Assembly: GCF_011386835.1 (NCBI RefSeq)
Contig: NC_088797.1
Location: forward strand, 32,550,001-32,614,000
From: Chrysemys picta bellii
Lineage: Eukaryota
Direction of reading: 5' to 3'
Length of the DNA: 64,000 nucleotides
Shown: positions 35,101 to 63,797 of the stretch, piece after piece
Position numbering within the stretch: position 1 is the stretch's first letter
How the letters are laid out: every line of letters begins with the position of its first letter
Translations under genes and position numbers: made by a program
Notes under the pieces: model-generated
Databases searched by the model: none
What the model was told of the DNA's origin: nothing
What the model saw: only the letters and a program-made list of their open reading frames with translations

Positions 35101-38100
35101 AACCTTATTTTCATGGTGTCATTCATCCCTCACACAAACAATTCCTATGTTTTGTGGTAGGCAAGGACGCTGCCAGCATTGCGTCCTAATCTTCGGCCTC
35201 TCCACCATTCCCCTCCCCATCCAAGGGTCTTTAACAAAGTTTTGTCAGCCACAGCAGCCTATCTTTGCCAGATAGGCATTATCATCTTTTCCTGCCTAGA
35301 TGACTAGCTCCTGAAAGGCCGCTCACTTCTCAAAGCACAGAGAGCAACCAGCAAGACCGTCTCTGTTTCACTTGCTGGGTCTCCACCTAACACCCACACA
35401 ACATATAGACTTAATCTGGGCCACTCTGGACTCCTTCCACCAGAGCATACTTATCCAGGGACAGATTCACTCCCGTGTCCAACCTTGTTTCAATAATCCA
35501 ACAGAGTCCACTAACCACTGTGAAGATATGGACCATGTGGCAATCTGTATGTTCACGACTCCCATTTTTGGTGTCTTTAAACATGGTTGAGAACCATCGA
35601 CACCCCCTACAGACACAACCTAGCCAAGCGGGCGTCAGTACCTCAGAAGAGCCTTGATTATCTGAACTCGTGGAAGGACCCACAAAAAGTGTTCTTGGGA
35701 GCTCTGTTTGTACAGCATCCTTCAATGAAGATCATCACCACAGATGACTGTCACATGTTGGGGTGCACACTCCCAAAACCTCACAGTTCAGGGCAAATGG
35801 ACCACTCAGGAGGCGATCCTCCATATCAACATATTGGAGCTCAGAACAGCCAGCTGCACTTGCCATCACTTCCTACTATACATTAAGGACAACAGTGTAG
35901 CAGTGTTACATCAATCAGCATGGAGGAGCAAGATCCCAGTCCTTGTGCACCAAAGCAATAAAACTATGGTACTAGTGCCTATCACATTGCATACAAGTGT
36001 GAGCGCTTTTCTGCAGCCCTCCTCTCAAAGCGTGACTACTTGATGTCTCTACTTCCTGTAAAATGCTCTTTACCTCACAATCTCGATTACCTGCTGAATT
36101 TAAAAACCACAGACTTATTGCTGAGCTCCATCAAAGTTCACCTAGCTGCCATCACAGCTTCTTACCTTCCCAGAGAAGGGTTCTCAGTCTTTGCCCCACC
36201 CCACCACTGCAAGATTTATCAAAGGCCTATTCAACATCTTCCCTCCTATCAAGGAACTAACTCTGCCATGAGACCTCACTTTATTTCTTGCCTTTTACCT
36301 CGACAGGACTAGGCCCTTTTCAGGTTTCCCCTTGACTCTTCACCTCTGTAGCAGAACAAATTAAGGGACATCCGATCTCCACCCAAAAACTGTCCATGCA
36401 GTTTTCAGGTTGTGTTCTATCATGCTGTGAGTTTTCAGGGGTTCATCCCACTCTCCAAAAGTTATTGCTTGTACCACCAGGGCTCAATCTACCTCTGTAG
36501 CCATTCTCAAAAATTTACCCATCTCAGACATCTGCAAGGCAGCCCCCTGGTCTTTGCCGCACACATTTTACCAGCATTACTCTCTTGTGCCCTATTCCAG
36601 GACCGATGCAGCCTTTGGTGGTGCTGTCCTTCGAGCAGTACTGAATCCACTTCCTCGCATTGGGGCCTCACTTTGAGATGTCTCCCCCTGTGGGTGATCC
36701 ACTACCTGCTCTCCTTCCCCTTGGCCTCAAGAGTCTCTTTCTTGGGACTTTTGTGATTGAGAAGGAACTTGAGTGGGCTCAGGTCCGCCCCTCCTTATAC
36801 ACCCTCAGATCTGGGCACAAGAATCTCTGCGGTGCAAGCGTGGAGCTGTGGACACAAATCTCTGGTCAAGAGTCCACGTGTGTCCTGATGTGGAGCACCC
36901 CTAGGGGGCGACATCTTGAAGAATTCAAGTTACTATACCAGGTAAGTAACTCCTCCATCTTTTTGATAAAGAGCTCAGTCAGTTTAGTTTGTATCCAACT
37001 GTCAGGCGTTTTCTCCTCCTCCTCTCTCTCCCCCCGCCCCCCAAAAAATCATTTTTGTGGCTGATGTGACTTGTTTGGCTGGTGTAAATTGTATTAATTT
37101 CTATTTTGCCTTCCAGCCTGCTGTTGCTTTGACTGAAGCAGAACAAACCCCATGCGTAAGTTATTGTAACCTTGAAACATTTGTTTCAATTATTAATCCT
37201 TGATTCCTTAAGCTGGCGTGGAGTAAAATGAAAAGCCCCACTGTGGTGATATGGCATAATTATATACCTGACAGCCTGTCGAGTTACATTCCCTATGTGT
37301 TGCTGAGCACATATCTCATCCCAGACACCCACTTCTGAGAGTTCTCAAGTTCTGAACTGAGACATCTGATGTTTGGGAAATGATCGGATTTTTATGAGTG
37401 TCCTAACAAGTAGCATTGGGTCTGGTATTTCTAAACACACCATAAGAGTGTCCATGCTCTGTATGTGCACGTCTAGCCTCAGTGTGGTTCAAATGTTTTG
37501 TCTTGCTTTGCACCCCTCCTCCCCTTGTCCTCCCACAGTCTTTTGGCTACACACTAATTGAATTCATTTGTTCCTCCAAGATGACTGGTACTGCTTGGAC
37601 TCCACGGCGCAGCCCCAGGGTAAGTGTCTATGTTCTCCTTTGGGTTTTGCTAGTATATTGGATATCAGGGGAAGGATGGTCCCAGTGACTTAGGGCACTA
37701 GCCTCAGACTTGGAAGACCTTGAACTTTGACAGACCTGCTTTAACTTAAAGTAAATATGAGCTGAGCTACTTCCTTTAGACAGCCCTGAGACTGAAGTGT
37801 TGATTGGCCCCGCCAGTGGGGGTAGGGGGGCGGCTGGGAGTTCCATAGGTTAGCTGTATTGGTGAGGGAGAAAAAGGGATAAACTCCATCTCCTTTCCTT
37901 GCAGATCTCCCAGAAGGCAGGAAAGGAGAACTTCCCAGTGGAAAGCAGCGAGGCCAAAGGCTGTGGAAGCACTGATGCTAACCCAGTCTTAGCATCATCT
38001 CTCCCTGCCAATGCCTCAGGCCTGGTGGAGAAGGCTGCCCTGTCTACAGTTAGCATCAATGTATGTGACTCTCCTCAGGATGAGAGGGATGTGCTGATGT

Positions 38101-38644
38101 CTAAGAAAGTGCGCCGATCCTACAGCCGCTTGGATGCCTCACCCAGCTTGGACATGTCCACACCCACATTCACCCAGAAGAAGTGCTCACTCTTTGGCTT
38201 TGAGAAGCTCCTAGTGCCTGATGCACTGGCCGATGTGTCTCCAGTGGGTAAGGTTTCCCCTGCCCAGGAGACTCCAGTGGAGCCCAATGCCTTGGGCTCC
38301 ACTAAGGAATGGGACACAAACATTCCTGGCATCTCCTTCCCCAAAGAGAAACGGAAGAAAAGGAGGATCCCCCAGATTGATGTGAGTACTGCCTGCTTAG
38401 GTGGGAGACCTCAAAGGAATTCTAGTATCACTCAAGTGCTCTAGTTGAGGGATGGGGAAATCTTTGGAGCAGGTACCCCTGCATTCTGTTAGCTGCTCTG
38501 TATCAATCAGCTTGTGCTTGTTATAATTACAGTTTTTTGTTGTTTTTACTTCCTCTGCTCTAGAAATCTGAACTGGATGAGTGGGCTGCTCAAATGAATG
38601 CACAGTTTGAAGAAGCAGAGCAGTTTGATCTTCTTGTGGAATGA
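20147..38644 (+). CDS. CDCA5: Sororin (cell division cycle associated 5), 7 coding exons, about 292 aa
   Basis: Exons 20147-20216, 22206-22315, 27842-27904, 37117-37155 (least certain), 37581-37619, 37905-38381, 38564-38644 (879 nt, all GT-AG, frame-consistent). Contains N-terminal [22 protein letters not shown], a KEN box (GKEN), [12 protein letters not shown], the FGF motif (LFGFEKLL) and the C-terminal [26 protein letters not shown] sororin domain. Head-to-head with ZFPL1 as in human. Confidence 0.93.
20280..21010. repeat. G-rich, CpG-rich minisatellite (about 77-bp unit) in CDCA5 intron 1
   Basis: GGTCTGTGGGGGACACTGGG recurs at 20341, 20418 and onward, with variant units. Confidence 0.9.
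21111..21828 (-). mobile_element. Young 5'-truncated CR1 LINE in CDCA5 intron 1
   Basis: Uninterrupted ORF2 C-terminus 21658-21188 ([21 protein letters not shown]...[17 protein letters not shown]) plus a CR1 3' UTR. Confidence 0.92.
22400..25430 (-). mobile_element. Degenerate Gmr1-like Ty3/Gypsy LTR retrotransposon in CDCA5 intron 2
   Basis: Minus-strand order: gag/SCAN-like ([10 protein letters not shown]...[19 protein letters not shown]), protease region, integrase ([20 protein letters not shown]; [14 protein letters not shown]; WEGPF), then an RT/connection fragment (YLGH; [11 protein letters not shown]). Boundaries approximate. Confidence 0.75.
24878..25046. mobile_element. hAT MITE inside the Gypsy remnant
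   Basis: TIRs CAGTTGTTCTCAACCT / AGGTTGAGAATGACTG; degenerate 8-bp TSD AATTAAAC / GATTAAAT. Confidence 0.7.
25740..27200 (-). mobile_element. LTR-type sequence flanking the Gypsy remnant, interrupted by a hAT MITE
   Basis: Repeat-like sequence directly 5' of gag, split by the MITE at 26172-26479; ends not resolved. Confidence 0.45.
26172..26479. mobile_element. hAT MITE
   Basis: Ends CAGTGGTTCTCAGCC...GGTTGAAAACCCCTG; 8-bp TSD TGCTCGAT / TGCTAGAT. Confidence 0.75.
28217..29043. mobile_element. Composite LTR fragments in CDCA5 intron 3
   Basis: Begins TGTCATAACTATAAAGGG (Gypsy-LTR-like start), changes character near 28400 and ends ...TTCCAACA; no TSD found. Confidence 0.45.
29770..32245 (+). 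mobile_element. CR1 LINE 3' fragment interrupted by a solo LTR
   Basis: RT remnants ([23 protein letters not shown]|TKLGG) and a CR1 3' end (GATCCCTTCCAACACTACATTTCT). Confidence 0.85.
30147..31405. mobile_element. Solo LTR with 5-bp TSD, containing a hAT MITE (30880-30996)
   Basis: TGTGATG...CGTCACA; TSD GACAC at 30142-30146 and 31406-31410. MITE TAGAGTGACC...GGTCACCCTA with TSD GTTCCCAC / GTTCCCAA. Confidence 0.85.
32440..32826 (-). mobile_element. CR1 3' fragment
   Basis: Minus-strand [17 protein letters not shown] remnant and CR1 tail. Confidence 0.7.
32827..36955 (+). mobile_element. Degenerate DIRS-type (tyrosine recombinase) retrotransposon
   Basis: Inverted termini GTTCTTCTTCAAGAAGCGTCCCTATAGGTGCTCCA / TGGAGCACCCCTAGGGGGCGACATCTTGAAGAATTC. 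ORF1-like DKDLKRLDL...[16 protein letters not shown]; RT remnants; RNase H HINILELR; YR N-terminal [12 protein letters not shown]. Confidence 0.8.
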
Positions 38645-47729: not shown

Positions 47730-50240
47730 TCAATAAAGTGAAAAACCTAAATGAATCAAACCATACCATAGATTCTCTAGGGATAGAAATTCCACCCTTG
47801 AACAAGAAGAGTATAGCAGTAGGAAAATACCACCTGACCAGGATGGTGACAGTGACTGTGAAAGACTGTACCCCAGATCAAAACAAGAGTAAGAGAACCA
47901 AGAAAATGCCACTATGGCTAAATAGCAGAGTCAGAGGCAGTTAGAGACAAAAAGGCATCCTTTAAAAATTGGAAGTCGAATCCCGGTGAGGAAAACAGAA
48001 AGGAACAAAAAACTCTGGCAGGTCAAGTGTAAAAGTATAACAAGAGCAAGCCAAGAGAGAGTTTGAAACACTAGCTAAAGACACAAAAACTAACAGCAAA
48101 AAACTGTTTAAGTACAGAAGAAGCAAGCCTGCTAAACAACGAGTGGGGCCACCGGAGGATCAAAGTGCTGAAGGAGCACTCAAGGAAGACAAGGCTGTTG
48201 CAGAGAAGCTAAGGCCTTGGCTACACTCGGGACTTCACACTGCTGCTGCGGCAGCGCTGTGAAGCGCGAGTGGAGTCGCAGCGCTGTATGTACTCCACCT
48301 CTCCGAGGGGAATAGCGTGCAGCGCCGCAGGCTCTGATTACACTGGGGCTTTACAGCGCTGTACTCGCTGTGCTCGGGGGGGAGGGGGGAGGCATTTTCA
48401 CACCCCTGAGCGCAGCAAGTTGCAGCACTGTACAGCGCCAGTGTAGCCAAGGCCTAAGTGAATTTGTTGCATCGCTCTTCACTGCAAAGCATGTGGGGGA
48501 CAACCCCACCCCCAAGCCCTTTCTTTTAAGTGACAGATCTGAGGAACTCTCCTAGATTGAGGTGTCAGTAGAGGAGGCTTTGGAACAAACCGATAAACAG
48601 CAATTAAGTCACCAGGACCAGATGGTATCAGCCAAGAGTTCTGAAGGAACTCAAATGTGAAAATTGCAGCACTATTAACTGTGGTATGTAACCTAGCACT
48701 GAAATCAGCCTCAGGACCAGATGACTGGAGTGTAGCTCATGTAATGCCAATTTTTAAAGAAGGCTCCAGGGGTGATCCTAGTATTTACTGGCCAGTGAGC
48801 CTAAGTCCAGTACCAGGCAAATTGGTTGAAACTATAGTAAAGAACAGAATTTTCAGACACATTGATAAACACAGTATGTTGGGGAAGAGTCAACACAGCT
48901 TTTGTAAAGGGAAATCATGCCTCACTGATCTATTAGAATTCTTTGAGGATGTCAACAAGCATGTGGACAAGGGTTATTCAGTCAATATAGTGTACTTGGA
49001 CTTTCAGAAAGCCTTTGATCAAGTCCCTCACCAAAGGCTCTTAAGCAAACTAAACTATCATGGGATAAGAGGGAAGGTCCTCTCATGGATCAGTAACTGA
49101 TTAAAAAGACCGGAAACAAAGGGTAGGAATAAATGGTCAGTTTATTGGAGAGAGGTAAATTGTGGTGTCCCCCTGGGATCTGTACTGGGACTTTTGCTGT
49201 TCAACATATTCATAAATGATCTAGAAAAGGGGGTGAAGAGTTAAGTGGCATCATTTGCAAATGATCCACAATTACTGATGATAGTTAAGTCCAAAGCTGA
49301 CTGTGAAGAGCTACAAAGGGATTTCAGGAAACTGGTTGACTGGGTGACAAAATGGCAGATGAAATTCAATGTTGATAAGTGCAAAGTAATGCACATTGGA
49401 AAACATAATCCCAATTTACATACAAAATGATGGGTCTAAATTAGCTGTTACCACTCAAGAAAGATCTTGGAGTCCTCGTAGATAGTTCTCTGAAAACATC
49501 TGTTCAATGTGCTGCAGAGGTCAAAAAAGCAAACAGAATGTTAGGAACCATCAGGAAAGGGATAGATAATAAGACAGTAAATACCATAATGCCACTACAT
49601 AAATCCATGGTTCGGGCCCACCCCTTGAATACTGCATGCAGTTCTTGTTGCCCCATCTCAAAAAAGATATATTAGAATTGGAAAAAGTACAGAGAAGGGC
49701 AACAAAAATCATTAAAGACATGGAACAGCTTCCATACGAAGAGAGATTAAAAAGACTGGGACTGTTCATCTTAGAAAGAGATGACTAAGGGGTCATGACA
49801 GAGATTTATAAAATCATGAAAGGTGTGGAGAAAGTGAATAGGGAAGTGTTACCAGAACTAGGAGTCACTTGATGAAATTAACAAGCAGCAGGTTTTAAAC
49901 AAACACAAGGCAGTACTTCTTCACACAACGCGCAGTCAGCCTGTGGAACTCTGCCAGGGTATGTTGTGAAGGCCAAAACTATAACAGGGTTTAAAAAAGA
50001 ATGAGATAAGCTCATGGAGGATGGGTCACTCAATGGCTATTAGCCAAGATGGTCAGGGAACCAACTCCATGCTCCAGGGGTCCCCAAACCTGTGACTACC
50101 AGAAGCCGGGACTGGACGACAGGGACGGATCATTCAAAATGGCCCTGTTCTGCTCATTCCCTCTGAAGCACCTGCCTACTGTCAGAGACAGGACACTGGG
50201 CTGGATGGACCATTGGTCTGACCGTTCCTATGATGAAAGG
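47730..50240 (+). mobile_element. CR1 LINE, about 2.5-kb 3' portion, with an inserted Harbinger MITE
   Basis: ORF 48657-49100 (YWPVSLSPVPGKLVET...KSCLTDLLEFF...YLDFQKAFDQVPH), FANDPQL, and a CR1 3' end. Confidence 0.9.
48213..48454. mobile_element. PIF/Harbinger MITE
   Basis: 15-bp TIRs GGCCTTGGCTACACT / AGTGTAGCCAAGGCC; TAA TSD on both sides. Confidence 0.85.
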
Positions 50241-51382: not shown

Positions 51383-54300
51383 ATGGGGAGGGGTCGGCGT
51401 CAGAGCCAGGCAGGAATTGCCAGTGCCGTGAGAAGCTCTTGGATGGTGCGTCCTGCTCTGAGGATGAGCACCTCAGCCATCCGCAGGAAATCCTACAAGA
51501 AAGTCCAGGGGCAGGCAGGGCCCTTCTCCCCAGCACACTGGGACGAGGCCGATGGTGGCCAGGTGCATGCTGGGAAGCTGCAGGTGATGGAGAAGTTCTT
51601 CACCCCGCTGCAGCGCCCCAAGGAGGGGAAGGGCTCAGAGCGGGAGCTGAGCCGGTGCCGCCAGCAGTGGATGGAGGGGCGGATCGACCGCTTCTCCTCC
51701 TCCTCCTCCTCGGCTGCATCTTCTACCACCGCAGTCTCCTGGTCCTCTGAAGCCAGCCTGGAGAAGGAGGCCTTCTTGGTGGGCGGCCCCATGTCCCAGC
51801 CCCAACATTCCCAGTCATGTGTGGACATCTCCAGAGAAGCCAGGGCCTTGCGCCGGGGAGGGGAGGGGACTGCCAGCTACAAGGCTGAGGAGCCCGTCTC
51901 CTTCCCCAGGCTGAAGAAGGGGCACAGCCAGAGCGTGGACCGGCTGTCCCAGCAGCGGGGTCCCCGGGAGGCCCAGTCCCCACCTCCTGCCCAGGCCGGC
52001 GGGGAAAGCCGGCTCTACAAAGCCAGCAGCCTGGAGAGGAGCTTGGTCTTTAATGAGCAGACCGAGATCTTGGCCCCACGGCTGCACAAACGGGCAGGGG
52101 CCCCGGCACCCAGCAAAGGCATCCTCAAGAATGGGGCTGTTGCCAAGAGCGACGGGCTGCGCAAGGCCAAGTCCATTGAGACTTTCCCTGTGCGGGCAGG
52201 CGAGAGGGAGCCCCGGGGCCTGCCGCCCCCCAGGGCCGAGGAGGAGCTGGAGCTGCTGCCGGAGCTGGGGGTCACCAAGAAGCACCACAGCATGGACCAG
52301 ATGAAACTAGTAGAGGAGAAGCTGAAGTTCTCTGAGTTCCTCAATGAGATCACCAGGCAGGTCATGAGCCCCTCCATCCTCAGCTCCCTGGGCTGGAAGC
52401 CACCAGAGGCTGCCAGTGCCGGCAAGGGCTCTGGCACCGACAGCTCTGAGTCCAAGAGCTCCGGCAGCAAAGGCAGCTCCCAGGGGTCCCTGGCTGAGAG
52501 CCGGGAGGGCCAGTGCCAGCAGGAGAGGGGCCCCCACGGCAGGAAGAGAGGCCCCTGGGGGGATCACACCAACCCAGCTCCCTCCAGGCACATGGACAAT
52601 GTCAGCAGCCTGGAGCTGGGCGTGGCCCCCCAGACCAGGCCAGGCGGTGAGGAGCAGAGGAAGCCTGGGGAAGGCAGGCCGGGCCACGGGGAGGAGACCG
52701 AGGGCCATGAGCAGCCATCTGCCCCCAGGAAGGTGGAGAAGGAGCGGGGCAGCCCCCCCAAGGAGCCCTGGGGCAAGGAGCAGCCAGAAGGGACAACACA
52801 ACAAGGCGGGGCCCACTGCAAGGTAGGTGGCAGTAGAGTAGTCCCTTCAGCACTAAGGCCCCACCCAAATCCCTTCCTGACCTGCCCCCATCCCCTGAGC
52901 CTTACAGCCCTAACAGATCCCCCCCAACTCTTCCCAGGCCCTGCAGCCCCCAACAGATCCCCCACCCCACCCCCTCCTGGGTCACTCGGGCTCTGCAGCC
53001 TCAACAGATTCTCCCCCCGACTCCTCCCGGGCCCTGCAGCCCCAACAGATCCCCCCCTGACCCCTCCTGGGTCACTCGAGCTCTGCAGCCCCAACAGATT
53101 CCCCCCCGCCCCCCGGCCAACTCCTCCCGGGCCCTGCAGCCCCAACAGATTTTTACCCCACCCCCCCACCAACCTCCTTCAGGTCCTCTGGACCCTGCAG
53201 CACCAACAGGTTATCCCCCCCAACCAGAATTACCCACACCCTGCGGCCCCAAACAGATTCCCCCAATCTCCCCAGGGTTATACTGCAGCCCCAACCAGGT
53301 CCTCCCAAAACCCCATCTCATCCCCCCATTCCCTGCACCCACCCGTGCCTGCAGCCCCAACCCCACCTCCTACCCCAGAAACACTTAGATCCTGTGCCCC
53401 CCATTTCCTCCCGACCCTCCCCTTCAATCACCCAGCCAACTGCAGCCCCAACCCCCCCCAGCCCCCGAACCATCAGTACCGTCCAGACAAAAGGCCAGAT
53501 ACAATTCACTCTGCAGCCTGTCACCTCCTCCCAGGGAGCAGGGGGTCTATCTCCAGCTCTGGCAGGGGAGTGGGGTCTAGTGGGTAGAGCAGGGGGCTGG
53601 GAGTCAGGACGCCTGGGTTCTATTCCCAACTCTCTGTACGACCTTGGGGATAAGTCCCTTCCCCGCTGTGTGCCTCAGTTTCCCTCTGTGTTCAAGGGAG
53701 CTACGTAGACTCACCCACTCTGAGATCTTGTGCTGGGCATTGGTGGCGTTTTACAAAGACTTGGGTTGTTGCTGAAGTCTGTCTCTGTCTGTCTATCTAG
53801 GAGCTGCAGCTGCAGACAGCCGATACAGAGCCAGCTAAGTGAGTATTGACCACATGCCACATACCTTGGAGCCTCCAGTCAAGATGCATGTTCCATTTAA
53901 GCTGTGTGTAAGGGACAGGAGGTCACTGTCCCGCTCTGCTCAGCATGGGCGAGGCCTCAGCTGGGTGTTGTGTCCAGGCTGGGCCCCGCACTGTATGAAA
54001 GAGGTGAACAAACTGGAGAGAGTCCGGAGGAGAACAACAAAAACGATCCGAGGTTTAGAAAGCCTGACCCGTTGGGCACGTTCAGTCTAGGGAAGAGATG
54101 GCTGATGGGGGACCTGAGAAGAGCCTTCAGTATGTGAATGGCTTGTACAGTGAAGCCGGAGATCAGTTGTTCTGCAGCACACAAAGGAACCAGCTTCACT
54201 TGCAGCAAGGGAGATTTATATTAGACGTTAGGACAAACATTCTAACAGTTAACACGGGAACAGGTTACCTAGGGAGATGGAGAAATCGCCATGATTGGAG

Positions 54301-57300
54301 GGTTTTGAGAACAAGTTGGACAAACATCTGTCAGGGATGCTCTGGGTTTACTTGGCCCTGCCTCAGTGCAGGGCACTGGAATAGATCTCTCTCGAGGTCC
54401 CTTCCAGCCCTACACTTCTGATTCTATGCCCAGTTCCTACATACCCCATCCAAGCCTCCTTTATACCCATACCTTAGTGTCAGGACAGTTTCAGGGTTGC
54501 TCAACCTCTGACTTACAGCTAGAGCACAGTGCGCTCTGGCCATCAGCCGAAGCTGCCTCCTGCGACAGCCGAGAACAGCCAGAGCGCAGCGCGCTCCAAC
54601 CGCATCCCTGATCCGCCTCCCATGGTCCCGGGGGGAGGGGCACAGAACAGCCAGAGCGCAGTACAACCGCATCCCTGATCCGCCTCCCATGGTCCCGGGG
54701 GGAGGGGCACAGAACAGCCAGAGCGCAGTACAACCGCATCCCTGATCCGCCTCCCACGGTCCCGGGGGGAGGGGCACAGAACAGCCAGAGCGCAGTACAA
54801 CCGCATCCCTGATCCGCCTCCCATGGTCCCGGGGGGAGGGGCACAGAACAGCCAGAGCGCAGCGCGCTCCAATCACATCCCTGATCCGTCTCCCACGGCC
54901 CCGGGGGGAGGGGCACAGAACAGCCAAAGCACAGCGCTCCAACCGCGTCCCTCATCCACCTCCCATGGCCTCCGGGGGGAGGGGCACAGAACAGCCAGAG
55001 CGCGTGTTCCAACCGCATCTCTGATCTGTCTCCCACGGCCTCTGGGGAGAGGAGCACAGACCAGCCAGAGCGCAGCGCGCTCGAACCGCATCCCTGATCC
55101 ACCTCCCACAGCCTCCAGGGGGAGGGGCACAGAACAGCCAGAGCACAGCACGCTCCAATCACATCCCTGATCCACCTCCCATGGCCCCGGGGGCAGAGAA
55201 CAGCCAGAGCGCAGTGCACGCCAACCACATCCCTGATCCACCTCTCACGACCCTAGGGGGCAGAGAACAGCCAGAGCGCTGAGCCACAACCCCTCTGCTG
55301 AAAACAGGACCAGTGCAGGGCCCTTATGCCAGCTACTCCCCAGCTATAGGGAGGAATCCCAGGGGGCAGTCTCCACCCTGTTGCCAGCACAGGTGTGCTC
55401 GAGGACAGCAACAGTGGGTTCGTTGCCCGGTGTGCTTCGCGTCAATAAACACACCAGGGGGAGAAGCAAACAAAGTTTATTTGGGATCCCAAAGCGGTGC
55501 AAGGAGACAGGCACGTCTCAAATCAAGCACATTAACAGGAACAGTTTTTCTTCTTTTATACATTTTGCAGTTAAGCCTCACCCCCCCCCCCCCGCCCTTT
55601 CCGCTCTAGCCCTCCCTTTCTCCCCCCCATTCCTCCCTCTACCCCTCCCGTCCCTGGTAATAGTTAAGTCATTCTTGGCAGCTATAAGCCTAGCTTGTTA
55701 GTAACTTCTTTAAACCGTTATCTTGTCCTTTTTCCCTTCAGCCAGAAACATGCAGACCTCATTATTACTGCTTGAGCAGGGGCTTGCACACAGATAACTG
55801 GTTGCTTACATATTCCAATTGCACCTGGCTTTTGAGGTTGATTAGAGTTTAAACATGGAAGGATAGAGTTTGGTTCACTTAGGCCTAGTGCAGGAAGGCT
55901 TCATTGACACTTAGTGGCCTTCCACCCTCCCGAGTTACCTAGGGTGAGGCTTAATGACGTCAACAACTCCCTCCTTTGAGAATACTCAACAAGCTTTTGG
56001 CTGAGTTTTCTCATATTCTGTGGACAAGATATGATTAAGTGCTATGAAGCTGGGGTTTTCAATGAGAGGGTATGCCGGGATTTTTGAGGAACGGGGGGCA
56101 CAAAGCTTACGGAGGAGCATTTTAAAACAAGCAATTAGGAGGAGGGTGACCAGGCACAATACCACACCGGTGAGGAGGAGACGCACAAGGCCACCCCCCA
56201 GTCCTCCTAGGTTGGGCAACCAACTTCAAAGGGAATTGAAAACTGTGGGTTTCCTTTCCTGGGCCTTCCACTGCTTGAAAGCCTGTTTGGCCGACAGGAT
56301 GTGCTTGTTAATGTCCTGTGAGTTTTCCGGGACATAAGTACAACATTCATTCCCAATAAGGGCACACACCCCGCCCTGGAGGCTAAAACATAATATAAGG
56401 CCTGTCTGTTTTGCAGGGACAGCAACCGGAGCTGGTATAGCTCTGAGTTAAGGCTCTTCTCTATGGCCAAGGTTTCATTAGCGAATGTGGTGAGAAACAC
56501 GGAGAGCCTATGATAAAATTGGGTTAGCTGTTCCACCCCATAGGATGGGAGGAGGATTATACCCAACCTGTCTCCTTCCTTAATGGGCTCTGAGGTGGCA
56601 TACAAAGATTTACGCTGCCTGGGGCGGCCAGGGGTTGTCCCTTAATGCATACTGGGATTCAATGGTACAGTTTTGTCACAAGGGGGTACCCGAGGTATTT
56701 CTTCCCCTACTGAACCATCCCCAACAGATATCTGACCAATTTTGGGGGACCACCCTCCAGGGTAACCCTGCTGTGTGGTGCAGGATTTGGGAACATACTC
56801 AGCAGTTAGAGAGGTTAAACTCTTGGGCAAAGCAAACCTTCAAGGACTCATATGTGTTTGTTTCCAAGTTAGTAGGGATCCCTTTCCATCCCACATGTGC
56901 CTTGGGGGAAACGGGAGGTAACGAAAGGAGTGTCCCTATGGCAAAGAGTACCACTGTGGCAGACCCTGGACCTGAACTCATGCTGGGCAGGTGACCCTAG
57001 GGCCTAACAATTACAATTCCCCAAATACCCACAAAATATCAATTACCAGTAGTATGCAGATTAAAAACAAAAGGACCAGGCCACCAGGTTAGGCCGGCCC
57101 TGTGAGAGTAAACACAACCAACGCTTAGAGTTTTCACGGGGAGTGCGCTGCGACTGTCCAAAGAGACCACAGGGCATTCCCAGCAGGCCTTATTGTCTTT
57201 TGAATAACAGTTTAAGTCTCAGGTCGTCGCTGGCAGTCTTTTTCCGTAGGCTGGACGGTCCACCATTCAGGAGCGGGCACTGCCTTCAGACGGGAGTGAT

Positions 57301-60300
57301 TGAATCCAGTTCTTGTGTCCCTTGACCTTTGCTGCTGTGTGGGAGACCAGCAGGACGGTGTGGGGTCCCTTCCACTTCTCTTGGAGAGGCTTGTCCTTCC
57401 AGGTCCGAACGAGAACGGAATTGCCTGGCTGCAAGGAATGGACAGGGGCATCCAGCGGGAGAGGCTGCAAATCTCTGGTATACCTGTGGAGAGAACAGAG
57501 AACAGCAGACAGAGAGCACATGTACTGAGATAAAAAGCCACACCCCATTTCCCACTCCCCTGCCAGAACCGGTGTACCGTTCATAGGCCATGCCCTTCCA
57601 AACATAATCTCGAAGGGACTGAGCCCTAACCTGCCCTTTGGGAGAGAGCGCATGTGGAGCAAAACAAGGGGTAAGGCATCAGGCCACTTAAGGGAAGCCT
57701 CTTTGCAGACCTTTGAGAGGTGCCGCTTAAGTGTCTGATTTGTGCGTTCCACTACTCCACTGGCCTGCGGTCGTCATGGAGTGTGGAGCTTCCAGGGGAT
57801 TTGCAGGGCATCCGATATCTTCTGAACAACTTGGGATGCGAAGTGTGTTCCGTTGTCAGATTCCATCCACTGGGGGAGGCCGAAGCGGGGAATGATCTCC
57901 TTGACAAATTTCAGAGCCACCGTTTTGGCAGTGTTGTTATGGCATGGGAAGGCTTCAGGCCATCTGCTGAATCGATCCACCAAGACGAAAAGGTATTTGA
58001 ATCCTCGGGTCTGGGGGAACTCAGTAAAGTCTATTTGCCAAACCAGCCCTGGGCCTGGGGTAGGTTCCAGAGTGGCTGGTGGCACTGACACTCCTGGTTG
58101 AGGGTTGTTCTTTTGGCAGACTAGACATTCAGCCTGTACCTGGGAGGCCAGGGGTGTAATAGCCTCCCTGCCAGCGTATAATTCTTTGTTTCTTCACCAG
58201 GGTCAGTTCTTAATGTCTTTTGTAGTCAGGAATTCCTGGACTTTGTGGTTTCAAAGAAGCAAGTGTTCCTTCTTCTCTTTTCCTGAAACAGTGTGGTTCA
58301 GCATCATACAGGGGAGAGGTTACTAGCACATCACCCTGTCTTTAAATAGGCTTATCATCAGTTGGAGAGTCCTCCCGAGGTGGAGGGGTCTTTTTACAGT
58401 GAGAAGCCTGGGTCCAGGTGGGCAGTCCTTGGTACTTCACAGCGGTGTTGGTGGTGAACAGGACTTGGAAAGGGCCTTTCCAGTGTGGAGCCAAAGCAGT
58501 TTTTCGTTGATGGACTTTACGTGGACTCAGTCTCCTTGTTTCAATGAATGGCAGGGCTGCTAGGGTATTTGGGTAGCACTTCTTTTATCTGTGAGAAAAG
58601 AAACCTAACACATTTCATTAATGCCTGACAGTGTTTTGCAGATCTCATAGTTGCTTGGGCCCATTCAGGCCCCCCCTTTTCTTGGCTGTCGGCCAAGTCT
58701 TAGCTTTGGGTAGTGTCCTTGGATGGTGCCAGCATCTTATCTTTGGACTGAGCTTGCTAGCTGTATTTTTTTCCCTCAGTTAACTCATTCTGTTCTTTTT
58801 CTTTTTCTCCTTTTTGGCTTCTTTTAACTTAGAAAGGAAACTTCCACTCTTCACTCATACACCTTTTCCCAACAATGAACACATACACATTGCCATTATC
58901 CAGCAAAATAACTTCTATACAGAGCTTTGGAGCAACAAACCAGGACGAGCACACCCACTTTTGAGGAGTCCAACAAAGTTCAGGAGGCTCACAGTGGCTT
59001 TAAGGCAAGGGGTGAGACCCACAGCAGCCATTAACAAGTCATCCACATATTGCAGGAGGAGGACCCTGTCCTCATTGTCCCACTCCTCCAAGTCTCTGGC
59101 CAGGGCCTGGCCGAAAAGGGTGGGGGAATTTTTAAATCCCTGGGCCAGCACTGTCCAGCAAAGCTGCTTTTTAACCCACCTTTTGTCATCCCACTGGCTC
59201 CACTCTGTGGCTTGCATGGCTGAGGGCTCAATTGCAAGGGTCATTATCCAGGTATTCTCCGGGGGTAAGGTGAGGGTTATTTCATCTTGGGTGAAATGCA
59301 GGGTGGCTCCTAAGCGACAAAGCAGGTCCCGTCCCAGTAGAGGTGTTGGACAATCAGGGAGGTAAACCAGTTTGTGAGATAGAGTTCTGTTTCCCAAAGC
59401 ACATTCCGCTGGGGCATACACTGGGCACTTGGTTCCTTTCCCTGTGGCACCCACCACAGTGAGGGACTCTGACACAGGCAGCTGCAGGGGTCGATTTACG
59501 GCGGCTCGTGCAGCTCCAGAGTCTATTAAAAAGTTGATGTCCAAGTCTCCCACCCTCATGTTTACTCGGGGTTCCAGGGGCAGGATAGTCTGTCTCCCCT
59601 GACACTCCTATTCTTGATCCTCCGCTGCCATCATAGGGGTACCTTCTCTTTCGGGGCACTCATTTTTCCAATGTCCCTCCTTTCGGCATCTGGCACACTG
59701 GTTGCGACCCAGACGCCTTTCCTGTGAGCCAGGGCGCCCACGGCCTCTCATTCCCCGGCCCCTTCCACCTTCCTGGAATTTTCCCCTGCCACCGGCCTGT
59801 ACTGCTGCGACCATCATTTTTGCTTGCCTCTTTTCCTTTTCTTAAGACACAACCTGATTATGCTCCACCTCAGACAGCAGGGTCCGCATAAGGACATTAC
59901 AATCATCCCAGTCAGGGTTACAGCTAGCCAGGCACCCTTCAAAGACCGAGATAGACTTGCTTGGGTTTGTAGAGAATTCCCCTGCCTGTGCCTTAAAGGC
60001 TGCTAGGTCCACCGGGTTAAAAGGCACATGGGTGTAAACCTGCATAGTAGTGGCCTGATTCCTATCTGAGCCATGTCTGGACACCACGGTCTCAGTGATC
60101 AACAGCTAAAATTCCACCGAGGGGGCAATCTCTGGGACCTGAGACACCTTGTCTTTATATGGTGGGGGTGTGATAGCCGAAGGGGACACCGGACCTGCCA
60201 TTACAGCTGTGGGGGGGTTCTGGGAACTAACAATAGCTACTACCGAACCTGTCGGAGTCAAATTACACTTTTGCAAAATATCTAACCTATCTCTTAGCAA

Positions 60301-63300
60301 CATAAACAACTGTACATACATATGTTCATTCCATTTACCCGTTTGCTGACAAAACAGAAGTAATTGAAGGATCGTGTTATAATTAAGTGATCCTTCCGGT
60401 GGCCACCTTTCCTGGTCCTCTAGCTGATATTGAGGCCAGTCTACTGTACAGAACCTTTTCAGTTTACTTTTAATCAACGGATCCGATCCAAACACTTTCC
60501 AATTCACCAGAATGCATTCCAAGGGTGTACACCTTGCCCTGCCTGCCATACTCTGTCCCTGCCCCGTAGGGAGACACTGGGCGTCCCCAGGTCATAACAG
60601 GTAGACACTAGGCGTCCCCAGGTCAAGACAGATAAAGTCCCCACTGGACTGTTCCTACCTTATCCAAGGGTCCGGTTCTGCACCGTCGCCCTATCCATGG
60701 GACCGGTTCCCCACCGTCGCCCGCAGCTGCTTCTCCACTACTCGAGCGCGTTGCACCGTTGTGCCCTCTGGGGTCGACCAAACCACGTCTCCGCCGAGGC
60801 CCCCGGTAAAGTCACCGGTGCGCGCTGGGCGTCGGTCGTCGCCGCAATCTGTCGACCTCCGAGAGGGGTCCGGGCAAGGCTAAATTTCAGCCTCGAGCCC
60901 CACGTTGGGCGCCAAAACTGTTGCCAGCACAGGTGTGCTCGAGGACAGCAACAGTGGGTTCGTTGCCCGGTGTGCTTCGCGTCAATAAACACACCAGGGG
61001 GAGAAGCAAACAAAGTTTATTTGGGATCCCAAAGCGGTGCAAGGAGACAGGCACGTCTCAAATCAAGCACATTAACAGGAACAGTTTTTCTTCTTTTATA
61101 CATTTTGCAGTTAAGCCTCACCCCCCCCCCCGCCCTTTCCGCTCTAGCCCTCCCTTTCTCCCCCCCATTCCTCCCTCTACCCCTCCCGTCCCTGGTAATA
61201 GTTAAGTCATTCTTGGCAGCTATAAGCCTAGCTTGTTAGTAACTTCTTTAAACCGTTATCTTGTCCTTTTTCCCTTCAGCCAGAAACATGCAGACCTCAT
61301 TATTACTGCTTGAGCAGGGGCTTGCACACAGATAACTGGTTGCTTACATATTCCAATTGCACCTGGCTTTTGAGGTTGATTAGAGTTTAAACATGGAAGG
61401 ATAGAGTTTGGTTCACTTAGGCCTAGTGCAGGAAGGCTTCATTGACACTTAGTGGCCTTCCACCCTCCCGAGTTACCTAGGGTGAGGCTTAATGACGTCA
61501 ACAACCCCACAGAGTACAAAGGGGCCTTAGTACCCCAGAGGTGTGAGGGGGACTGCGCTTGAATACATGGGGATGGGTGTGCTCTAAGAGCCCCCTGCAT
61601 CCTTGGAGTGGCTCTGCAGGGGGAGCGCCGATGGAGGGCTGTAGGCAGAGGGGGGCATGCAGCTCAAAGATCCAACAGGGGAGCAGGCCAGCAGTTCTGG
61701 CCCAGATGGATCCTGGTCCTAGCTCCAGTCACTCCAGCCAGGTCCAGGGCTCTGGCATGACAAGACATCTGGGGCTCAGATTCCCCACTGCCAGTGCTCT
61801 CTGTGACCCCAGGTTGCCCAGAGACCATGGCGTGGAGCAGGCGGAAGGAGCAGGTGCAGGGGCCAAGTCTGGCCCTGCTGGGCAGCAGGATCTGCAGCAG
61901 ACCTGGGAAGAGCTGGAGTTGCTGAAGGAGAAGTTCAGCAGGTAAGGGATGCAGAAGCCTGGCCTTTGGGTGGGTGGGGCCTCCTCACAGCCACTCCCCC
62001 AGGAGGTGGAGTCTATTACAGCCCTACCCCCTTGTGGGTTGAGTCTGCTCTCATAGCCACACCCACCAGGAGGCAGAGTCTAGTATAGCCCTTCGCCCCT
62101 TGGGGGCAGAGCCTGCTCTCCAGTTCACTCGCTTGGTGGTTGAGTCTGTTATAGCCCCACCCCTCTTGGAGGCATCAAGTCTATTCTCACAACACTACCT
62201 CCTTGGAGACAGGACCCTTCCCCACATGCACAACTAACCTGTGGGACTCCCCACTGTAGGTACAAAGAGCTCTGATTGGTGGAGCTGGGTTACCAGTAGC
62301 ACCTCCTGCCATTGCACAGCTCTGAGTCCCTCCCTCGCTTCTCCCTGAGGTTCAAGTTTCTTGTCACCCTAGGCCCTTCTGGGCACTGTCCAACCCACGT
62401 GGCATGGCTCCCCTTGGCCTCCGCTACACTGCCAGCAACACAGGAGCCTGTAAGAGACCAGCCCCCATTAACAATAATTATGTCTATACTGAGAGAAGGT
62501 AGAGATTGGGAATGTATCCCACTGCCTCCATCAATCACACACTAAGTCACATGGGTTCTTAGTTTGTATGCTTGTCTGTCGGGCACTCGGCAAAACAGGG
62601 TCCCGAGATCGATCTTGCAAGCTAAGCAGAATTATGTCTCACTAATACTTGGACGGGAAACCTCCAAAGAAAATTCACAGTCCTGCAAAGGATGCGGTGG
62701 AGACTCAGTATAGGGTGCTTTCCCCTCACAATCAGCACTGACCCCATACCCCAGCACAGTGCCACCCAATGCTGGGCAAGAGATCATTATATAAACAGCT
62801 CCCATGCCCTCCCCCCCAGAGGCGGCTGCATCTTAGCACCGGACGAGGGATCCCTGTATGAACAGCCCCCACACGCCATCTCAGCACCAGGTGAAAGATC
62901 CCTGCATCTGTAGGGAGGTTTTCAAGACAGTCTCAATCTCTTGTCTGTTTCCCCCCCAGGCTGCAGGAGGACTATTCCAACACCCAACGCACCAACCAGC
63001 TGCTGGAGGAGAAACTTCACCTCATTGTAAGGGCAGCTTCATTGCTGGCAGGGAGCAGTCCCAGATTTGGGCTTACAGACCCCCACATTGAAAGGGAGCA
63101 ACCCCATGGTCAGATCCATGAGCCCTGGAGACTCAGCTGCCCAGACAGGGAACAACCCATTACCTCATTCAATGTAGGCTCTTACACTGGGCCCATCACC
63201 GTGGTATTTGAGCCTCTAACAGCTGCTCTATCCATATATTAAGTGCACCATGTAGCTACACTCCCGAGGGACGTGGGGGTCTGATTTTTCCATCCCACAA

Positions 63301-63797
63301 TCTCTCCCATAGTTCTGATGAGACATGAAGCCAAATCTCTCTCCCCCGCCCCCCACCAGGGTATTCAGCTGCCCTGACAATTTGCACAGAGATTTGGATA
63401 TTAACCAGGGTATCCCAGCCAAATCCCAAACCACTTCATGGGCCTAAATTGCTCCCTGCCTGGCAGTTTCAATCAGACACAGGATCATCCCACATGTCAT
63501 ATCTTCAAATGCTGTCCAACATTGTTGTGCAGATGTTAAACAGCCCCCATATCCCACCCCAGAGGTGGCTGCATCTCAGCGCTGGGGGACCAGGAGTCCT
63601 GATTCCCAGCCTCCAAGCACTAGGCCATTCTTCCCCTGACCATCTAGTCTTGCTGTCCTGAGCCCTTTGCTGTCTCCCTCCCCCCGCAGGCTCAGAGCAT
63701 GGCAGCTGAGAAACAAACCCTGAACCAGCACATTACTGAGCTGCTCGAGAGGCTTATTAGTGCCCAGAACACCATCTGCACGCTGGAGAGACTCAAC
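51383..63797 (+). CDS. Uncharacterised BEGAIN/TJAP1-family coiled-coil protein; 3' part runs off the window
   Basis: Exons 51383-52822 (480 codons; ACCATGG Kozak, in-frame TAA at 51374), 53801-53838, 61813-61941, 62960-63026, 63690-63797. All GT-AG with consistent phases 0/2/2/0/0; 594 codons in the window. Spliced C-terminal part QQDLQQTWEELELLKEKFSRLQEDYSNTQRTNQLLEEKLHLIAQSMAAEKQTLNQHITELLERLISAQNTICTLERLN parallels TJAP1 (recalled: SREELDKFKDKFRRLQNSYTASQRTNQELEDKLHTL...RKTLDWEIVELTNKLLDAKNTINKLEELN). Confidence 0.85.
52880..53490. repeat. Degenerate C-rich tandem repeat (CTGCAGCCCCAACAGAT core)
   Basis: The core recurs about 10 times just after the 52822 donor. Confidence 0.75.
53900..54428 (+). 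mobile_element. CR1 3' fragment
   Basis: ARPQLG...SRLGPALYER remnants; tail GGTCCCTTCCAGCCCTACACTTCTGATTCTATG. Confidence 0.85.
54570..55280. repeat. 67-bp minisatellite, about 11 copies
   Basis: CAGAACAGCCAGAGCGCA at 54643, 54710, 54777 and onward; later units are more diverged. Confidence 0.92.
55379..55965 (-). repeat. ERV 3' LTR (587 bp)
   Basis: Preceded on the minus strand by the PPT CTCAAAGGAGGGAGT; polyA signal at 55481-55476. Confidence 0.95.
55986..56981 (-). pseudogene. env: ERV env (gamma-type), SU largely deleted, TM frameshifted
   Basis: Signal-like MSSGPGSATVVLFAIGTLL; C*VC (broken CWVC); LQNRQALYYVL immunosuppressive domain; CALIGNECC (CX6CC) after a 1-nt frameshift near 56380; hydrophobic anchor LVRLLLTGVVLCLVTLLLIACF. 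Confidence 0.88.
57190..58190 (-). pseudogene. pol: ERV integrase with an internal stop and a terminal frameshift
   Basis: CLVC, WQIDF, ESDNGTHF, VERTN (D-D-E intact), WKGPHTVLL; TGA at 57776-57774 replaces Trp in HTP-W-RPQASG. Confidence 0.9.
58960..59607 (-). pseudogene. pol: ERV protease fused in frame to a partial RT
   Basis: FLIDSGA and LLGRDLL protease motifs, then a jump to WTVLAQGFKNSPTLF...LLQYVDDLL. The RT N-terminal half, connection domain and RNase H are absent. In frame with gag across the TAG. Confidence 0.9.
59608..60567 (-). pseudogene. gag: ERV gag (matrix, PPPY late domain, truncated capsid, one CCHC knuckle), disrupted
   Basis: (ACG)GQGQS-MAGRARCTPLECILVNW...WPQYQL...GSLNYNTILQL; TPPPYK; frameshift near 60105; most of CA deleted near 59840; CARCRKEGHWKNEC; TAG at 59610-59608. 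Confidence 0.9.
60897..60914 (-). other. ERV primer-binding site for tRNA-Lys1,2
   Basis: TGGCGCCCAACGTGGGGC, 4 nt after the 5' LTR; this is the canonical 18-nt Lys1,2 PBS. Confidence 0.9.
60919..61503 (-). repeat. ERV 5' LTR (585 bp)
   Basis: TG...CA ends; TATAAAAG and AATAAA on the minus strand; identical by eye to the 3' LTR except the poly-C run (11 vs 13). Confidence 0.95.
62590..62770 (+). mobile_element. 5S rRNA-derived SINE (AmnSINE1-like)
   Basis: GATCTTGCAAGCTAAGCAG...TAATACTTGGACGGGAAACCTCC resembles the 5S internal promoter (GATCTCGGAAGCTAAGCAGG...TAGTACTTGGATGGGAGACC), then diverges into SINE body. Confidence 0.6.

What the first reader, a model, noticed from the sequence alone, without database searches (positions are those of the whole stretch)
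51383..63797. Unnamed BEGAIN/TJAP1-family gene with a large N-terminal extension beside CDCA5
Seen: five GT-AG exons splice in one frame (480 + 114 codons). The last three encode a coiled coil that aligns with the TJAP1/BEGAIN N-terminal coil, including 67-nt and 108-nt exons and a phase-2 junction in KFSR|LQ. Known: TJAP1 (tight junction/Golgi) and BEGAIN (PSD-95 partner) start close to this coil, and I recall no such gene next to human CDCA5. Inference: this is a further paralogue with about 500 extra N-terminal residues, possibly lost in mammals and uncharacterised.
Basis: partly seen in the sequence, partly recalled or inferred. Interest (0 to 1): 0.78.

Follow-up and report, generated by a model that had tools for sequence, protein, structure and literature searches.

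The report
Third TJAP1/BEGAIN-family gene in turtle
This turtle carries an intact, unstudied third relative of two known cell-junction and synapse scaffold genes (TJAP1 and BEGAIN); it is kept from sharks to birds, I found no mammalian copy, and its long front part is an old family module, not a new add-on.

Summary
Five GT-AG exons (51383-52822, 53801-53838, 61813-61941, 62960-63026, 63690-63797) stay in one frame. Annotated proteins of Mauremys and Caretta use exactly these junctions. A sixth, last exon lies beyond the window.

The gene sits between CDCA5 and NAALADL1. An exhaustive profile search and a tree place it in a well-supported third clade, 100/99, beside TJAP1 and apart from BEGAIN. 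That clade holds sharks, ray-finned fishes, amphibians, squamates and turtles. Archosaur copies (alligator, crane, swallow) are diverged. I found no mammalian member.

Orthologues are already predicted in public databases as "uncharacterized LOC..." (si:ch211-276i12.4 in cyprinids) and carry Pfam BEGAIN_coil. I found no study of the gene.

The roughly 450-residue N-terminal part is not unique to this gene. A homologous open reading frame continues from TJAP1 exon 1 in alligator, and it appears in annotated long TJAP1 isoforms of sharks. Its core helix also appears in predicted long BEGAIN forms.

The likely function is a dimeric, mostly disordered scaffold with a PDZ-ligand-like C-terminus. 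This is inferred, not shown.

The scan had already flagged the 3' part of this gene in the adjoining window.

The parts
51383..52822 (+). Coding exon 1, the large N-terminal region. It is 480 codons from the first ATG and 453 from the conserved start at 51464.
   Evidence: The frame is open and the donor at 52823 is GT. It is 90-96% identical to turtle orthologues, with homologues down to fishes. dN/dS against Mauremys is 0.46.
51464..51466 (+). Probable true start codon (MSTSAIRRKSYKK...).
   Evidence: The squamate and salamander orthologues and the Mauremys RefSeq model begin here. The 27 codons upstream are open only in turtle models.
51584..51585 (+). Candidate internal phase-0 donor (CAG|GTGATG), 40 codons after the conserved start. 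Whether it is used is untested.
   Evidence: It sits at the position homologous to the exon-1 donor of alligator TJAP1, which lies after codon 42 (CAG|GTAACA, phase 0). This is an inference only.
53801..53838 (+). Coding exon 2 (38 nt, ELQLQTADTEPA-).
   Evidence: It has AG/GT splice sites. The same peptide is present in P0003 and P0004.
54521..54994 (.). Tandem repeat with a 67-nt unit, inside intron 2.
   Evidence: Found. It is also repeated in Mauremys. The Chelonia mydas model P0002 wrongly translates it.
55379..61503 (-). LTR retroelement inserted in intron 2, antisense to the gene.
   Evidence: Its terminal repeats are 100% identical over 214 and 300 nt. The element is absent from the collinear Mauremys locus. 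Its gag/pro/pol-like ORF pieces lie on the minus strand. I only observed it.
61813..61941 (+). Coding exon 3 (129 nt): a linker plus the start of the coiled coil, ending ...EELELLKEKFSR.
   Evidence: It aligns with the alligator and crane copies.
62960..63026 (+). Coding exon 4 (67 nt, LQEDYSNTQRTNQLLEEKLHLI).
   Evidence: It has the same size and phase as the alligator TJAP1 exon at L004 16064-16130.
63690..63797 (+). Coding exon 5 (108 nt), the end of the coiled coil. It is the last exon inside the window.
   Evidence: It has the same size as the alligator TJAP1 exon at L004 17909-18016. Exon 6 lies beyond 64000.
37875..38644 (+). Last exons of CDCA5 (sororin), the upstream neighbour.
   Evidence: tblastn with ORFs from the Podarcis Sororin_C gene hit here at 1e-11 and 2e-30.

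Best explanation
This is the first five of six coding exons of an intact protein-coding gene. The gene is the third gnathostome paralogue of the TJAP1/BEGAIN family. It is the orthologue of Mauremys LOC120369056 and Podarcis LOC114587059, and the cyprinid proteins named after zebrafish si:ch211-276i12.4 fall in the same clade. It lies between CDCA5 and NAALADL1.

The protein has about 870 residues and is predicted to be almost wholly disordered, apart from three helices:
- a conserved amphipathic helix in the N-terminal region (EEKLKFSEFLNEITRQVMSP);
- the 78-residue BEGAIN_coil helix, which in TJAP1 is predicted to form a homodimer;
- a short helix near the C-terminus (DYQSAQKILD).

The disordered arms carry conserved short motifs: KLQVMEKFFTP, a serine run followed by WSSEAS, basic serine sites such as RLKKGHSQSVDRL and RKAKSIE, and SKGILKN. 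In all 16 tetrapod sequences I read, the protein ends in DST[LS]L-COOH, which fits a class I PDZ ligand.

I infer that it works as a dimeric adaptor that tethers partners, most plausibly MAGUK-type PDZ proteins, probably in neurons. This would parallel the way BEGAIN and TJAP1 bind PSD-95/DLG-family proteins.

The N-terminal region is an ancestral family module. TJAP1 skips it in its canonical isoform, whereas every long model of this paralogue includes it.

Shown here: the gene structure, orthology, clade, synteny and sequence constraint. Inferred: dimerisation, PDZ binding and neuronal role.
For: - Structure and orthology.
- Family: Pfam BEGAIN_coil hits are on record for the orthologues. 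A coil profile searched against 1.84 billion representatives returned named BEGAIN and TJAP1 proteins.
- Exon sizes and phase are shared with alligator TJAP1.
- Separate clade: support is 100/99.
- Synteny: a Sororin_C gene lies upstream in Podarcis, a NAALADL1-like gene lies downstream in Mauremys, and CDCA5 is in the window.
- Constraint: exon-1 dN/dS is 0.46 against Mauremys, and the motifs are conserved from sharks to turtles.
- Fold: the AlphaFold2 model has confident helices at 272-301, 483-560 and 772-787 and is disordered elsewhere.
- C-terminus: it is DST[LS]L in 16 of 16 tetrapod sequences and GE[RSQ]TxL in one teleost copy.
- Ancestral module: the N-terminal profile hits TJAP1 long forms at 63-95 bits and BEGAIN long forms at 14-38 bits. 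The alligator TJAP1 exon-1 frame stays open for 595 codons and carries the motifs.
- Neuronal expression of the zebrafish namesake: si:ch211-276i12.4 is listed among the markers of a mature neuronal cluster of the optic tectum (PMC8869500).
- TJAP1 biology: coil homodimer prediction and binding to a DLG-family protein come from PMC10820826.
Against:
- The link from exon 1 to the coil exons therefore rests on predicted models in other species and on conservation of the architecture. In Alosa pseudoharengus the two halves are annotated as separate isoforms.
- A 6.1-kb retroelement sits in intron 2 and could disturb splicing in this individual.
- The painted turtle's own protein did not appear in the protein collection.
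- The second teleost copy and the shark models lack the T-x-L end. The archosaur copies have a diverged end of the coil and seem to lack the C-terminal region. The PDZ-ligand idea is therefore not universal.
- No binding partner was tested.
Confidence: 0.8

Rival explanations
1. Two transcription units. The large ORF exon and the coil exons are made as separate messages. One is an N-terminal-only protein. The other is a short, BEGAIN/TJAP1-like protein that starts near the coil. On this view the joined 594-codon model is an artefact of gene prediction.
For: Alosa pseudoharengus LOC143132612 is annotated with isoform X1 as the N-terminal part only (551 aa) and X2 as coil plus C-terminus (341 aa). 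Several fish representatives start right at the coil (P0040, P0042, P0063). I have no reads for the turtle.
Against: Joined models exist in many independent annotations of turtles, squamates, salamanders, eels, shad, cyprinids and sharks. The frame is compatible across all junctions. The same order, N-terminal module then coil, recurs in TJAP1 and BEGAIN long forms, which is hard to explain unless the ancestor made one protein. Short isoforms may well coexist with the long one.
Confidence: 0.1
2. The copy in this painted turtle is a recently disabled or decaying gene, hit by the retroelement in intron 2, even though the gene is functional in other turtles.
For: There is a 6.1-kb insertion with identical LTRs that Mauremys lacks. 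The species' own protein was not found in the protein collection.
Against: All five exons are intact, with consensus splice sites and no frameshift or stop. The insertion is intronic and antisense. A dN/dS of 0.46 shows past constraint, though it cannot detect a very recent loss.
Confidence: 0.07
3. It is simply the turtle orthologue of TJAP1 or BEGAIN, in a long isoform.
For: It shares the coil, the exon sizes and the phase with TJAP1. One bichir member is labelled "TJAP1 protein" by its submitter.
Against: Its clade is separate at 100/99. Alligator and sharks have both genes. It lacks the Pilt domain, which scores 256-362 bits in TJAP1. It lacks the DSLT[RK]AQ..LL[ND] end. Its synteny is with CDCA5 and NAALADL1.
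Confidence: 0.02

Closest known systems
TJAP1 (Pilt, tight junction-associated protein 1)
   Same: It is the sister clade in the coil tree at 95/85. It shares the BEGAIN_coil helix, the 67-nt and 108-nt exons and the phase-2 junction. Its N-terminus, M-x-S-x-A-..-[RK]K-x-Y-[RK]K-A, resembles this gene's MSTSAIRRKSYKKV by eye. At the TJAP1 locus a long ORF homologous to this gene's exon 1 continues in frame from exon 1 (alligator, and Logan contig L001), and long isoforms are annotated in sharks.
   Different: TJAP1 has the C-terminal Pilt domain PF15453 and ends ...DSLTRAQEQG[TN]LL[ND]. This gene has neither. The Mint-PTB-binding peptide KPYRKAPPEHRELR (PMC10820826) is only partly matched. The genomic neighbourhood differs. 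In amniotes the first half of this gene's coil has degenerated into a non-helical linker.
BEGAIN (brain-enriched guanylate kinase-associated protein)
   Same: It shares the coil domain, and its Pfam family bears BEGAIN's name. Predicted long BEGAIN forms carry the core helix of the N-terminal module, [KP]FS[QKR]FL[DN]EVT..VL[DA]P, in fishes, meerkat and star-nosed mole. A possible neuronal role is shared (for the zebrafish namesake).
   Different: BEGAIN forms a separate clade at 100/98. It ends ...DSLT[RK]AQLYGTLLN. Only the helix of the N-terminal module is recognisable in BEGAIN, not the whole region.
Zebrafish si:ch211-276i12.4 and the many "uncharacterized LOC..." predictions
   Same: They belong to the same clade and have the same architecture of N-terminal module plus coil. 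They are database entries only.
   Different: Teleosts have two copies. The si:ch211-276i12.4-type copy has lost the T-x-L C-terminus that the other copy and the tetrapod proteins keep. Several are misnamed after low-complexity matches, as filaggrin, LIM domain-containing protein A, knob-associated histidine-rich protein, cadherin-23 and unc-89-like.

Membership tests
TJAP1/BEGAIN family (Pfam PF27583 BEGAIN_coil) | A match to the BEGAIN_coil domain model. | tested here: met
   Hits are on record for the orthologues P0003, P0004, P0006 and others. The local Pfam copy lacks this model, so the window's own exons gave no hit. The turtle orthologues are about 95% identical to the window in the coil.
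TJAP1/BEGAIN family (Pfam PF27583 BEGAIN_coil) | Significant sequence similarity to named BEGAIN and TJAP1 proteins. | tested here: met
   A profile of 14 third-clade coils found 282 proteins at E<=0.001. Among them were named BEGAIN (hedgehog, meerkat, Xyrauchen) and named TJAP1 (alligator, Chiloscyllium, Brachyistius) at E 1e-11 to 1e-26.
TJAP1/BEGAIN family (Pfam PF27583 BEGAIN_coil) | Shared intron positions and phases in the coil. | tested here: met
   The exons are 67 and 108 nt and the junction is AG|G both in the window and in alligator TJAP1. I did not examine a BEGAIN locus.
TJAP1 orthologue group | C-terminal Pilt domain (PF15453). | tested here: not met
   TJAP1 of alligator and shark score 256 and 362 bits. 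P0004, P0006, P0016, P0023 and P0052 give nothing at E<=1.
TJAP1 orthologue group | Placement inside the TJAP1 clade, and TJAP1 synteny. | tested here: not met
   It forms a separate clade at 100/99. Its neighbours are CDCA5 and NAALADL1. Alligator has both genes.
TJAP1 orthologue group | N-terminal Mint-PTB-binding peptide KPYRKAPPEHRELR. | tested here: inconclusive
   The window has RRKSYKKVQGQAGP at the same place. The basic-Y-basic core is kept and the PPEHR turn is not. This is a by-eye comparison with PMC10820826.
BEGAIN orthologue group | Placement inside the BEGAIN clade, and the C-terminal ...DSLT[RK]AQLYGTLLN. | tested here: not met
   The BEGAIN clade has 100/98 support and excludes the gene. 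The C-terminus is DST[LS]L.
Class I PDZ-ligand proteins (functional analogy, not a family) | C-terminal [ST]-x-hydrophobic-COOH that binds a PDZ domain. | not testable with these tools
   The motif is present and conserved in 16 of 16 tetrapod sequences and in one teleost copy. Binding was not tested. The turtle's own last exon lies outside the window.

The most novel reading that the evidence does not exclude
The roughly 450-residue N-terminal region is an overlooked ancestral module of the whole TJAP1/BEGAIN family. Its core helix, FSxFL[ND]E[IV]TxxV[LM][SD]P, is still encoded at TJAP1 in sauropsids, sharks and teleosts, and in predicted long BEGAIN forms that include mammals. It would be switched in or out by use of a conserved phase-0 donor about 40 codons into exon 1. 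The third paralogue would then be the always-long member, with a free T-x-L end that docks on MAGUK PDZ domains. Studying it would reveal an unknown function of the long isoforms of the mammalian synaptic and junctional scaffolds.
Probability: 0.3. Interest if true: 0.6.

Novelty: new member of a known kind. Interest (0 to 1): 0.45.

Why it matters
BEGAIN and TJAP1 are partners of the PSD-95/DLG scaffolds, and their own functions are poorly understood. A third ancient family member has been kept for over 400 million years in most jawed vertebrates, and I found no mammalian copy. It is therefore a natural comparison point and a knock-out target in zebrafish or Xenopus.

The more useful by-product is that the large N-terminal region is shared with long, unstudied forms of TJAP1 and BEGAIN. 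This points to a conserved helix and a set of motifs that nobody has assigned a partner to.

The finding also adds to a local pattern, alongside the nearby PROX3 noted by the scan, of genes in this CDCA5-NAALADL1-SAC3D1 neighbourhood that I did not find in mammals. It also gives another example of a bird gene hidden in very GC-rich sequence.

It is not a new kind of system. The gene is already predicted by annotation pipelines.

Tried and rejected
1. Pfam scans of the exon translations and of the orthologues gave nothing. The local copy lacks PF27583, so this says nothing about family membership.
2. PDB sequence searches with exon 1 and with the coil profile found nothing. No solved structure is available to borrow.
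3. A word-index search with the coil of P0004 reached only turtles and squamates. I needed the exhaustive profile search to reach BEGAIN and TJAP1.
5. I hoped the Logan and ENA cluster members were spliced transcripts. They read into introns, so they are genomic.
6. I looked for CDCA5 with sororin motifs recalled from memory and failed. tblastn with the Podarcis gene found it.
7. I considered a PP1-binding reading, with SKGILKN as a SILK motif and KLRF as RVxF. I rejected it because the RVxF-like position is Q, N or R in several orthologues.
8. I first read the alligator copy as a pseudogene, because the end of its coil exon does not align. The crane and swallow copies share that same altered end and then keep the PPPAFRD motif. 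It is therefore an archosaur-wide divergence, not a private lesion.
I searched exons by reference and used annotated orthologues as proxies.


Full report
**What is in the window.**
All are bounded by AG and GT, with good pyrimidine tracts. Together they make 1782 nt in one open frame.

Intron 2 is 8 kb long because it holds two extra elements. One is a tandem repeat with a 67-nt unit at 54521-54994. The other is a 6.1-kb LTR retroelement on the opposite strand at 55379-61503. Its terminal repeats are 100% identical, and the element is missing from the otherwise collinear locus of the turtle Mauremys reevesii. I only observed this element.

Earlier notes of the scan identify the genome as painted turtle.

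**Is it a real gene?**
Exon 1 alone, searched by reference, finds proteins in turtles (90-96% identity), squamates (about 50%), salamanders, frogs, eels, sturgeon, bichir, arapaima and a cyprinodont.

Mapping P0004 onto its own locus and onto the window shows six coding exons. The sixth, of 305 codons, lies about 0.8 kb past exon 5, which puts it beyond the window's end.

Exon 1 has evolved under moderate purifying selection since Chrysemys and Mauremys split (dN/dS 0.46, dS 0.09).

Squamate and salamander proteins begin at MS[AT]SAIRRKSYKK. The start codon is therefore more likely 51464 than 51383.

Annotated orthologues served as proxies.

**Neighbours.**
- In Podarcis a Sororin_C gene (CDCA5) lies 4.6 kb upstream on the same strand.
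- In Mauremys a PA/Peptidase_M28/TFR_dimer gene (NAALADL1-like) lies 1.5 kb downstream.
- In the window, the last CDCA5 exons are at about 37875-38644 on the + strand.

So "beside CDCA5" is right.

**Family.**
The Pfam hit on record for the orthologues, PF27583, is named BEGAIN_coil. My local Pfam copy lacks it.

I built a profile of the coil from 14 diverse members (A2) and searched it against 1.84 billion representative proteins. It returned 282 hits at E<=0.001. Cluster look-ups named the groups:
- BEGAIN: hedgehog, meerkat, star-nosed mole and cypriniforms.
- TJAP1: alligator, bamboo sharks and teleosts.
- A large set of "uncharacterized" proteins: sharks, rays, chimaera, many teleosts including the cyprinid "si:ch211-276i12.4", and Pogona.
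- Lamprey proteins and invertebrate relatives.

A careful maximum-likelihood tree of 69 coils, rooted on the invertebrates, gave these supports:

| Group | Support |
|---|---|
| Third clade | 100/99 |
| BEGAIN | 100/98 |
| TJAP1 | 86/63 |
| Third clade + TJAP1 | 95/85 |

The tree rests on only 124 columns, so deep order is less secure than clade membership.

Cartilaginous and bony fishes both occur in the third clade and in TJAP1. The split therefore predates crown gnathostomes. Teleosts have two copies of the third gene.

The exon structure agrees. In the alligator TJAP1 locus the homologous exons are 67 and 108 nt, and the junction before them is AG|G, as in the window.

The third clade lacks TJAP1's Pilt domain. 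It also lacks the ...DSLT[RK]AQ..LL[ND] end shared by TJAP1 and BEGAIN.

**The N-terminal "extension" is not peculiar to this gene.**
One weak hit of the first search, P0031, begins with the TJAP1 N-terminus MSSTAPSKKPYRKAPPQHREIR. The human peptide KPYRKAPPEHRELR is the Mint-PTB ligand described in PMC10820826. P0031 then reads straight on into a sequence with the motifs of the turtle exon 1: LERSL, KGILK, RKSRSVE and EEKLQFSKFLDEITQRVLSP (blastp 1e-15).

The alligator TJAP1 locus does the same. The canonical exon 1 ends at a CAG|GTAACA donor after codon 42, but the frame stays open for 595 codons and is 60% identical to P0031 over 486 residues.

A profile of the third clade's N-terminal region hits the following:
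- annotated long TJAP1 isoforms of bamboo sharks, for example isoform X1 of 921-957 aa against the short 634-aa form;
- long TJAP1-type predictions of several teleosts, at 63-95 bits;
- more weakly (14-38 bits), predicted long BEGAIN forms of teleosts, meerkat and star-nosed mole. In these the core helix [KP]FS[QKR]FL[DN]EVT..VL[DA]P is plain to see.

The module is therefore ancestral to the family.

In the turtle gene a CAG|GTGATG lies 40 codons after the conserved start (51583|51584). It is in phase 0, which is the homologous position of the TJAP1 donor. Using it would give an in-frame short isoform. This is a hypothesis and nothing more.

**Distribution.**
Members of the third clade were found in chondrichthyans, ray-finned fishes, amphibians, squamates and turtles.

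Archosaurs have diverged copies:
- Alligator has a 167-aa model at the very start of a contig, next to an ATG2-like gene.
- The crane Grus japonensis has a locus of 72% G+C next to a PLC-beta gene. It contains an 811-codon open frame carrying KLQLLERFFTP, the serine run, RLRRGLSRSHERL and RFSRFLDELTRRVLSP. The coil exons follow.
- The barn swallow has a related fragment.

In these archosaurs the last third of the coil is replaced by a proline- and glycine-rich stretch. I could not find the C-terminal region.

I found no mammalian member among the hits that I named or classified. That is absence from predicted proteins, not proof of loss.

**What the protein is likely to do.**
AlphaFold2 on P0004 with the family alignment gives confident structure for only three helices, at 272-301, 483-560 (the coil) and 772-787. 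The rest is predicted disordered.

The alignment shows short conserved motifs spread along the disordered parts. The C-terminus is DST[LS]L in 16 of 16 tetrapod sequences. It is GE[RSQ]TxL in one of the two teleost copies. Both fit a class I PDZ ligand.

TJAP1's coil is predicted to homodimerise. TJAP1 and BEGAIN bind DLG/PSD-95-family proteins (PMC10820826, plus my general knowledge of BEGAIN).

Zebrafish si:ch211-276i12.4 is listed among the markers of a mature neuronal cluster in the optic tectum (PMC8869500).

From these points I infer a dimeric, motif-bearing adaptor, probably neuronal, that may dock on PDZ scaffolds. None of this was tested.

**What is missing.**
There is no transcript evidence from this species. 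The run search found holders but none on record as RNA. I sent nothing from those places to any search tool afterwards.

The exon 1-to-coil link in the turtle therefore rests on three things: models in other species, frame compatibility, and recurrence of the same architecture in all three paralogues.

**Novelty.**
I found no paper that studies the gene. Annotation pipelines already predict it, and Pfam already covers its coil. It is a new, uncharacterised member of a known family, not a new kind of thing.

Noticed in passing
window 55379-61503 (minus strand): An LTR retroelement sits in intron 2 of the gene. Its terminal repeats are 100% identical over the 214 and 300 nt compared, and the collinear Mauremys locus lacks it, so the insertion is young. 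Its coding pieces are fragmented into many short ORFs. I only observed it.
   Followed up: partly
window 54521-54994: An intronic tandem repeat with a 67-nt unit is also repeated in Mauremys. The Chelonia mydas model P0002 (990 aa) translates this repeat as protein (GGAENSQSAVHSNRIPDPPRTAP, several copies) and skips coil exons. That is an annotation artefact.
   Followed up: partly
L004 10001-11785 (alligator TJAP1 locus) and L001 1945-3552: The frame of TJAP1 exon 1 stays open far past the canonical donor, for 595 and 535 codons. It encodes a region homologous to the turtle gene's exon 1. This implies a long TJAP1 isoform in sauropsids that the 460-aa alligator model lacks.
   Followed up: partly
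L006 8339-12412 (Grus japonensis, 72% G+C, beside a PLC-beta gene): A bird copy of the third paralogue is annotated only as a 132-aa hypothetical protein. Upstream lies an 811-codon open frame with the family's N-terminal motifs and internal GTLGDP-type repeats. The end of the coil is replaced by a Pro/Gly-rich stretch, as in alligator, and the frame stops soon after PPPAFRDPPRP. A swallow fragment (P0213) is similar.
   Followed up: partly
P0104 (meerkat) and P0089 (star-nosed mole), residues about 98-128: Predicted long mammalian BEGAIN forms carry PFSRFLDEVT[AV]RVL[DA]P upstream of the coil. This is the same helix as FSEFLNEITRQVMSP in the turtle gene. I do not know whether these upstream exons are expressed.
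   Followed up: no
P0001, P0007, P0024, P0035, P0044, P0066, P0190: Members of the clade are misnamed in public records as cadherin-23, unc-89-like, filaggrin or filaggrin-2, knob-associated histidine-rich protein and LIM domain-containing protein A. The cause is evidently low-complexity matches.
   Followed up: no
window 37875-38644 (+): These are the last two coding exons of CDCA5 (sororin), ending ...[24 protein letters not shown]. The 12.7 kb between CDCA5 and the gene contains a CR1-type reverse-transcriptase fragment at 48657-49100.
   Followed up: partly
By its own wording this is a filter that also trips by chance. I drew no conclusion and sent nothing from them to any search tool.
   Followed up: no
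L005 93-1990 (alligator): The alligator copy lies at the very start of a 42-kb contig, with an ATG2-like gene 1.7 kb downstream on the other strand. In turtle the downstream gene is NAALADL1-like. This may be a rearrangement or an assembly effect.
   Followed up: no
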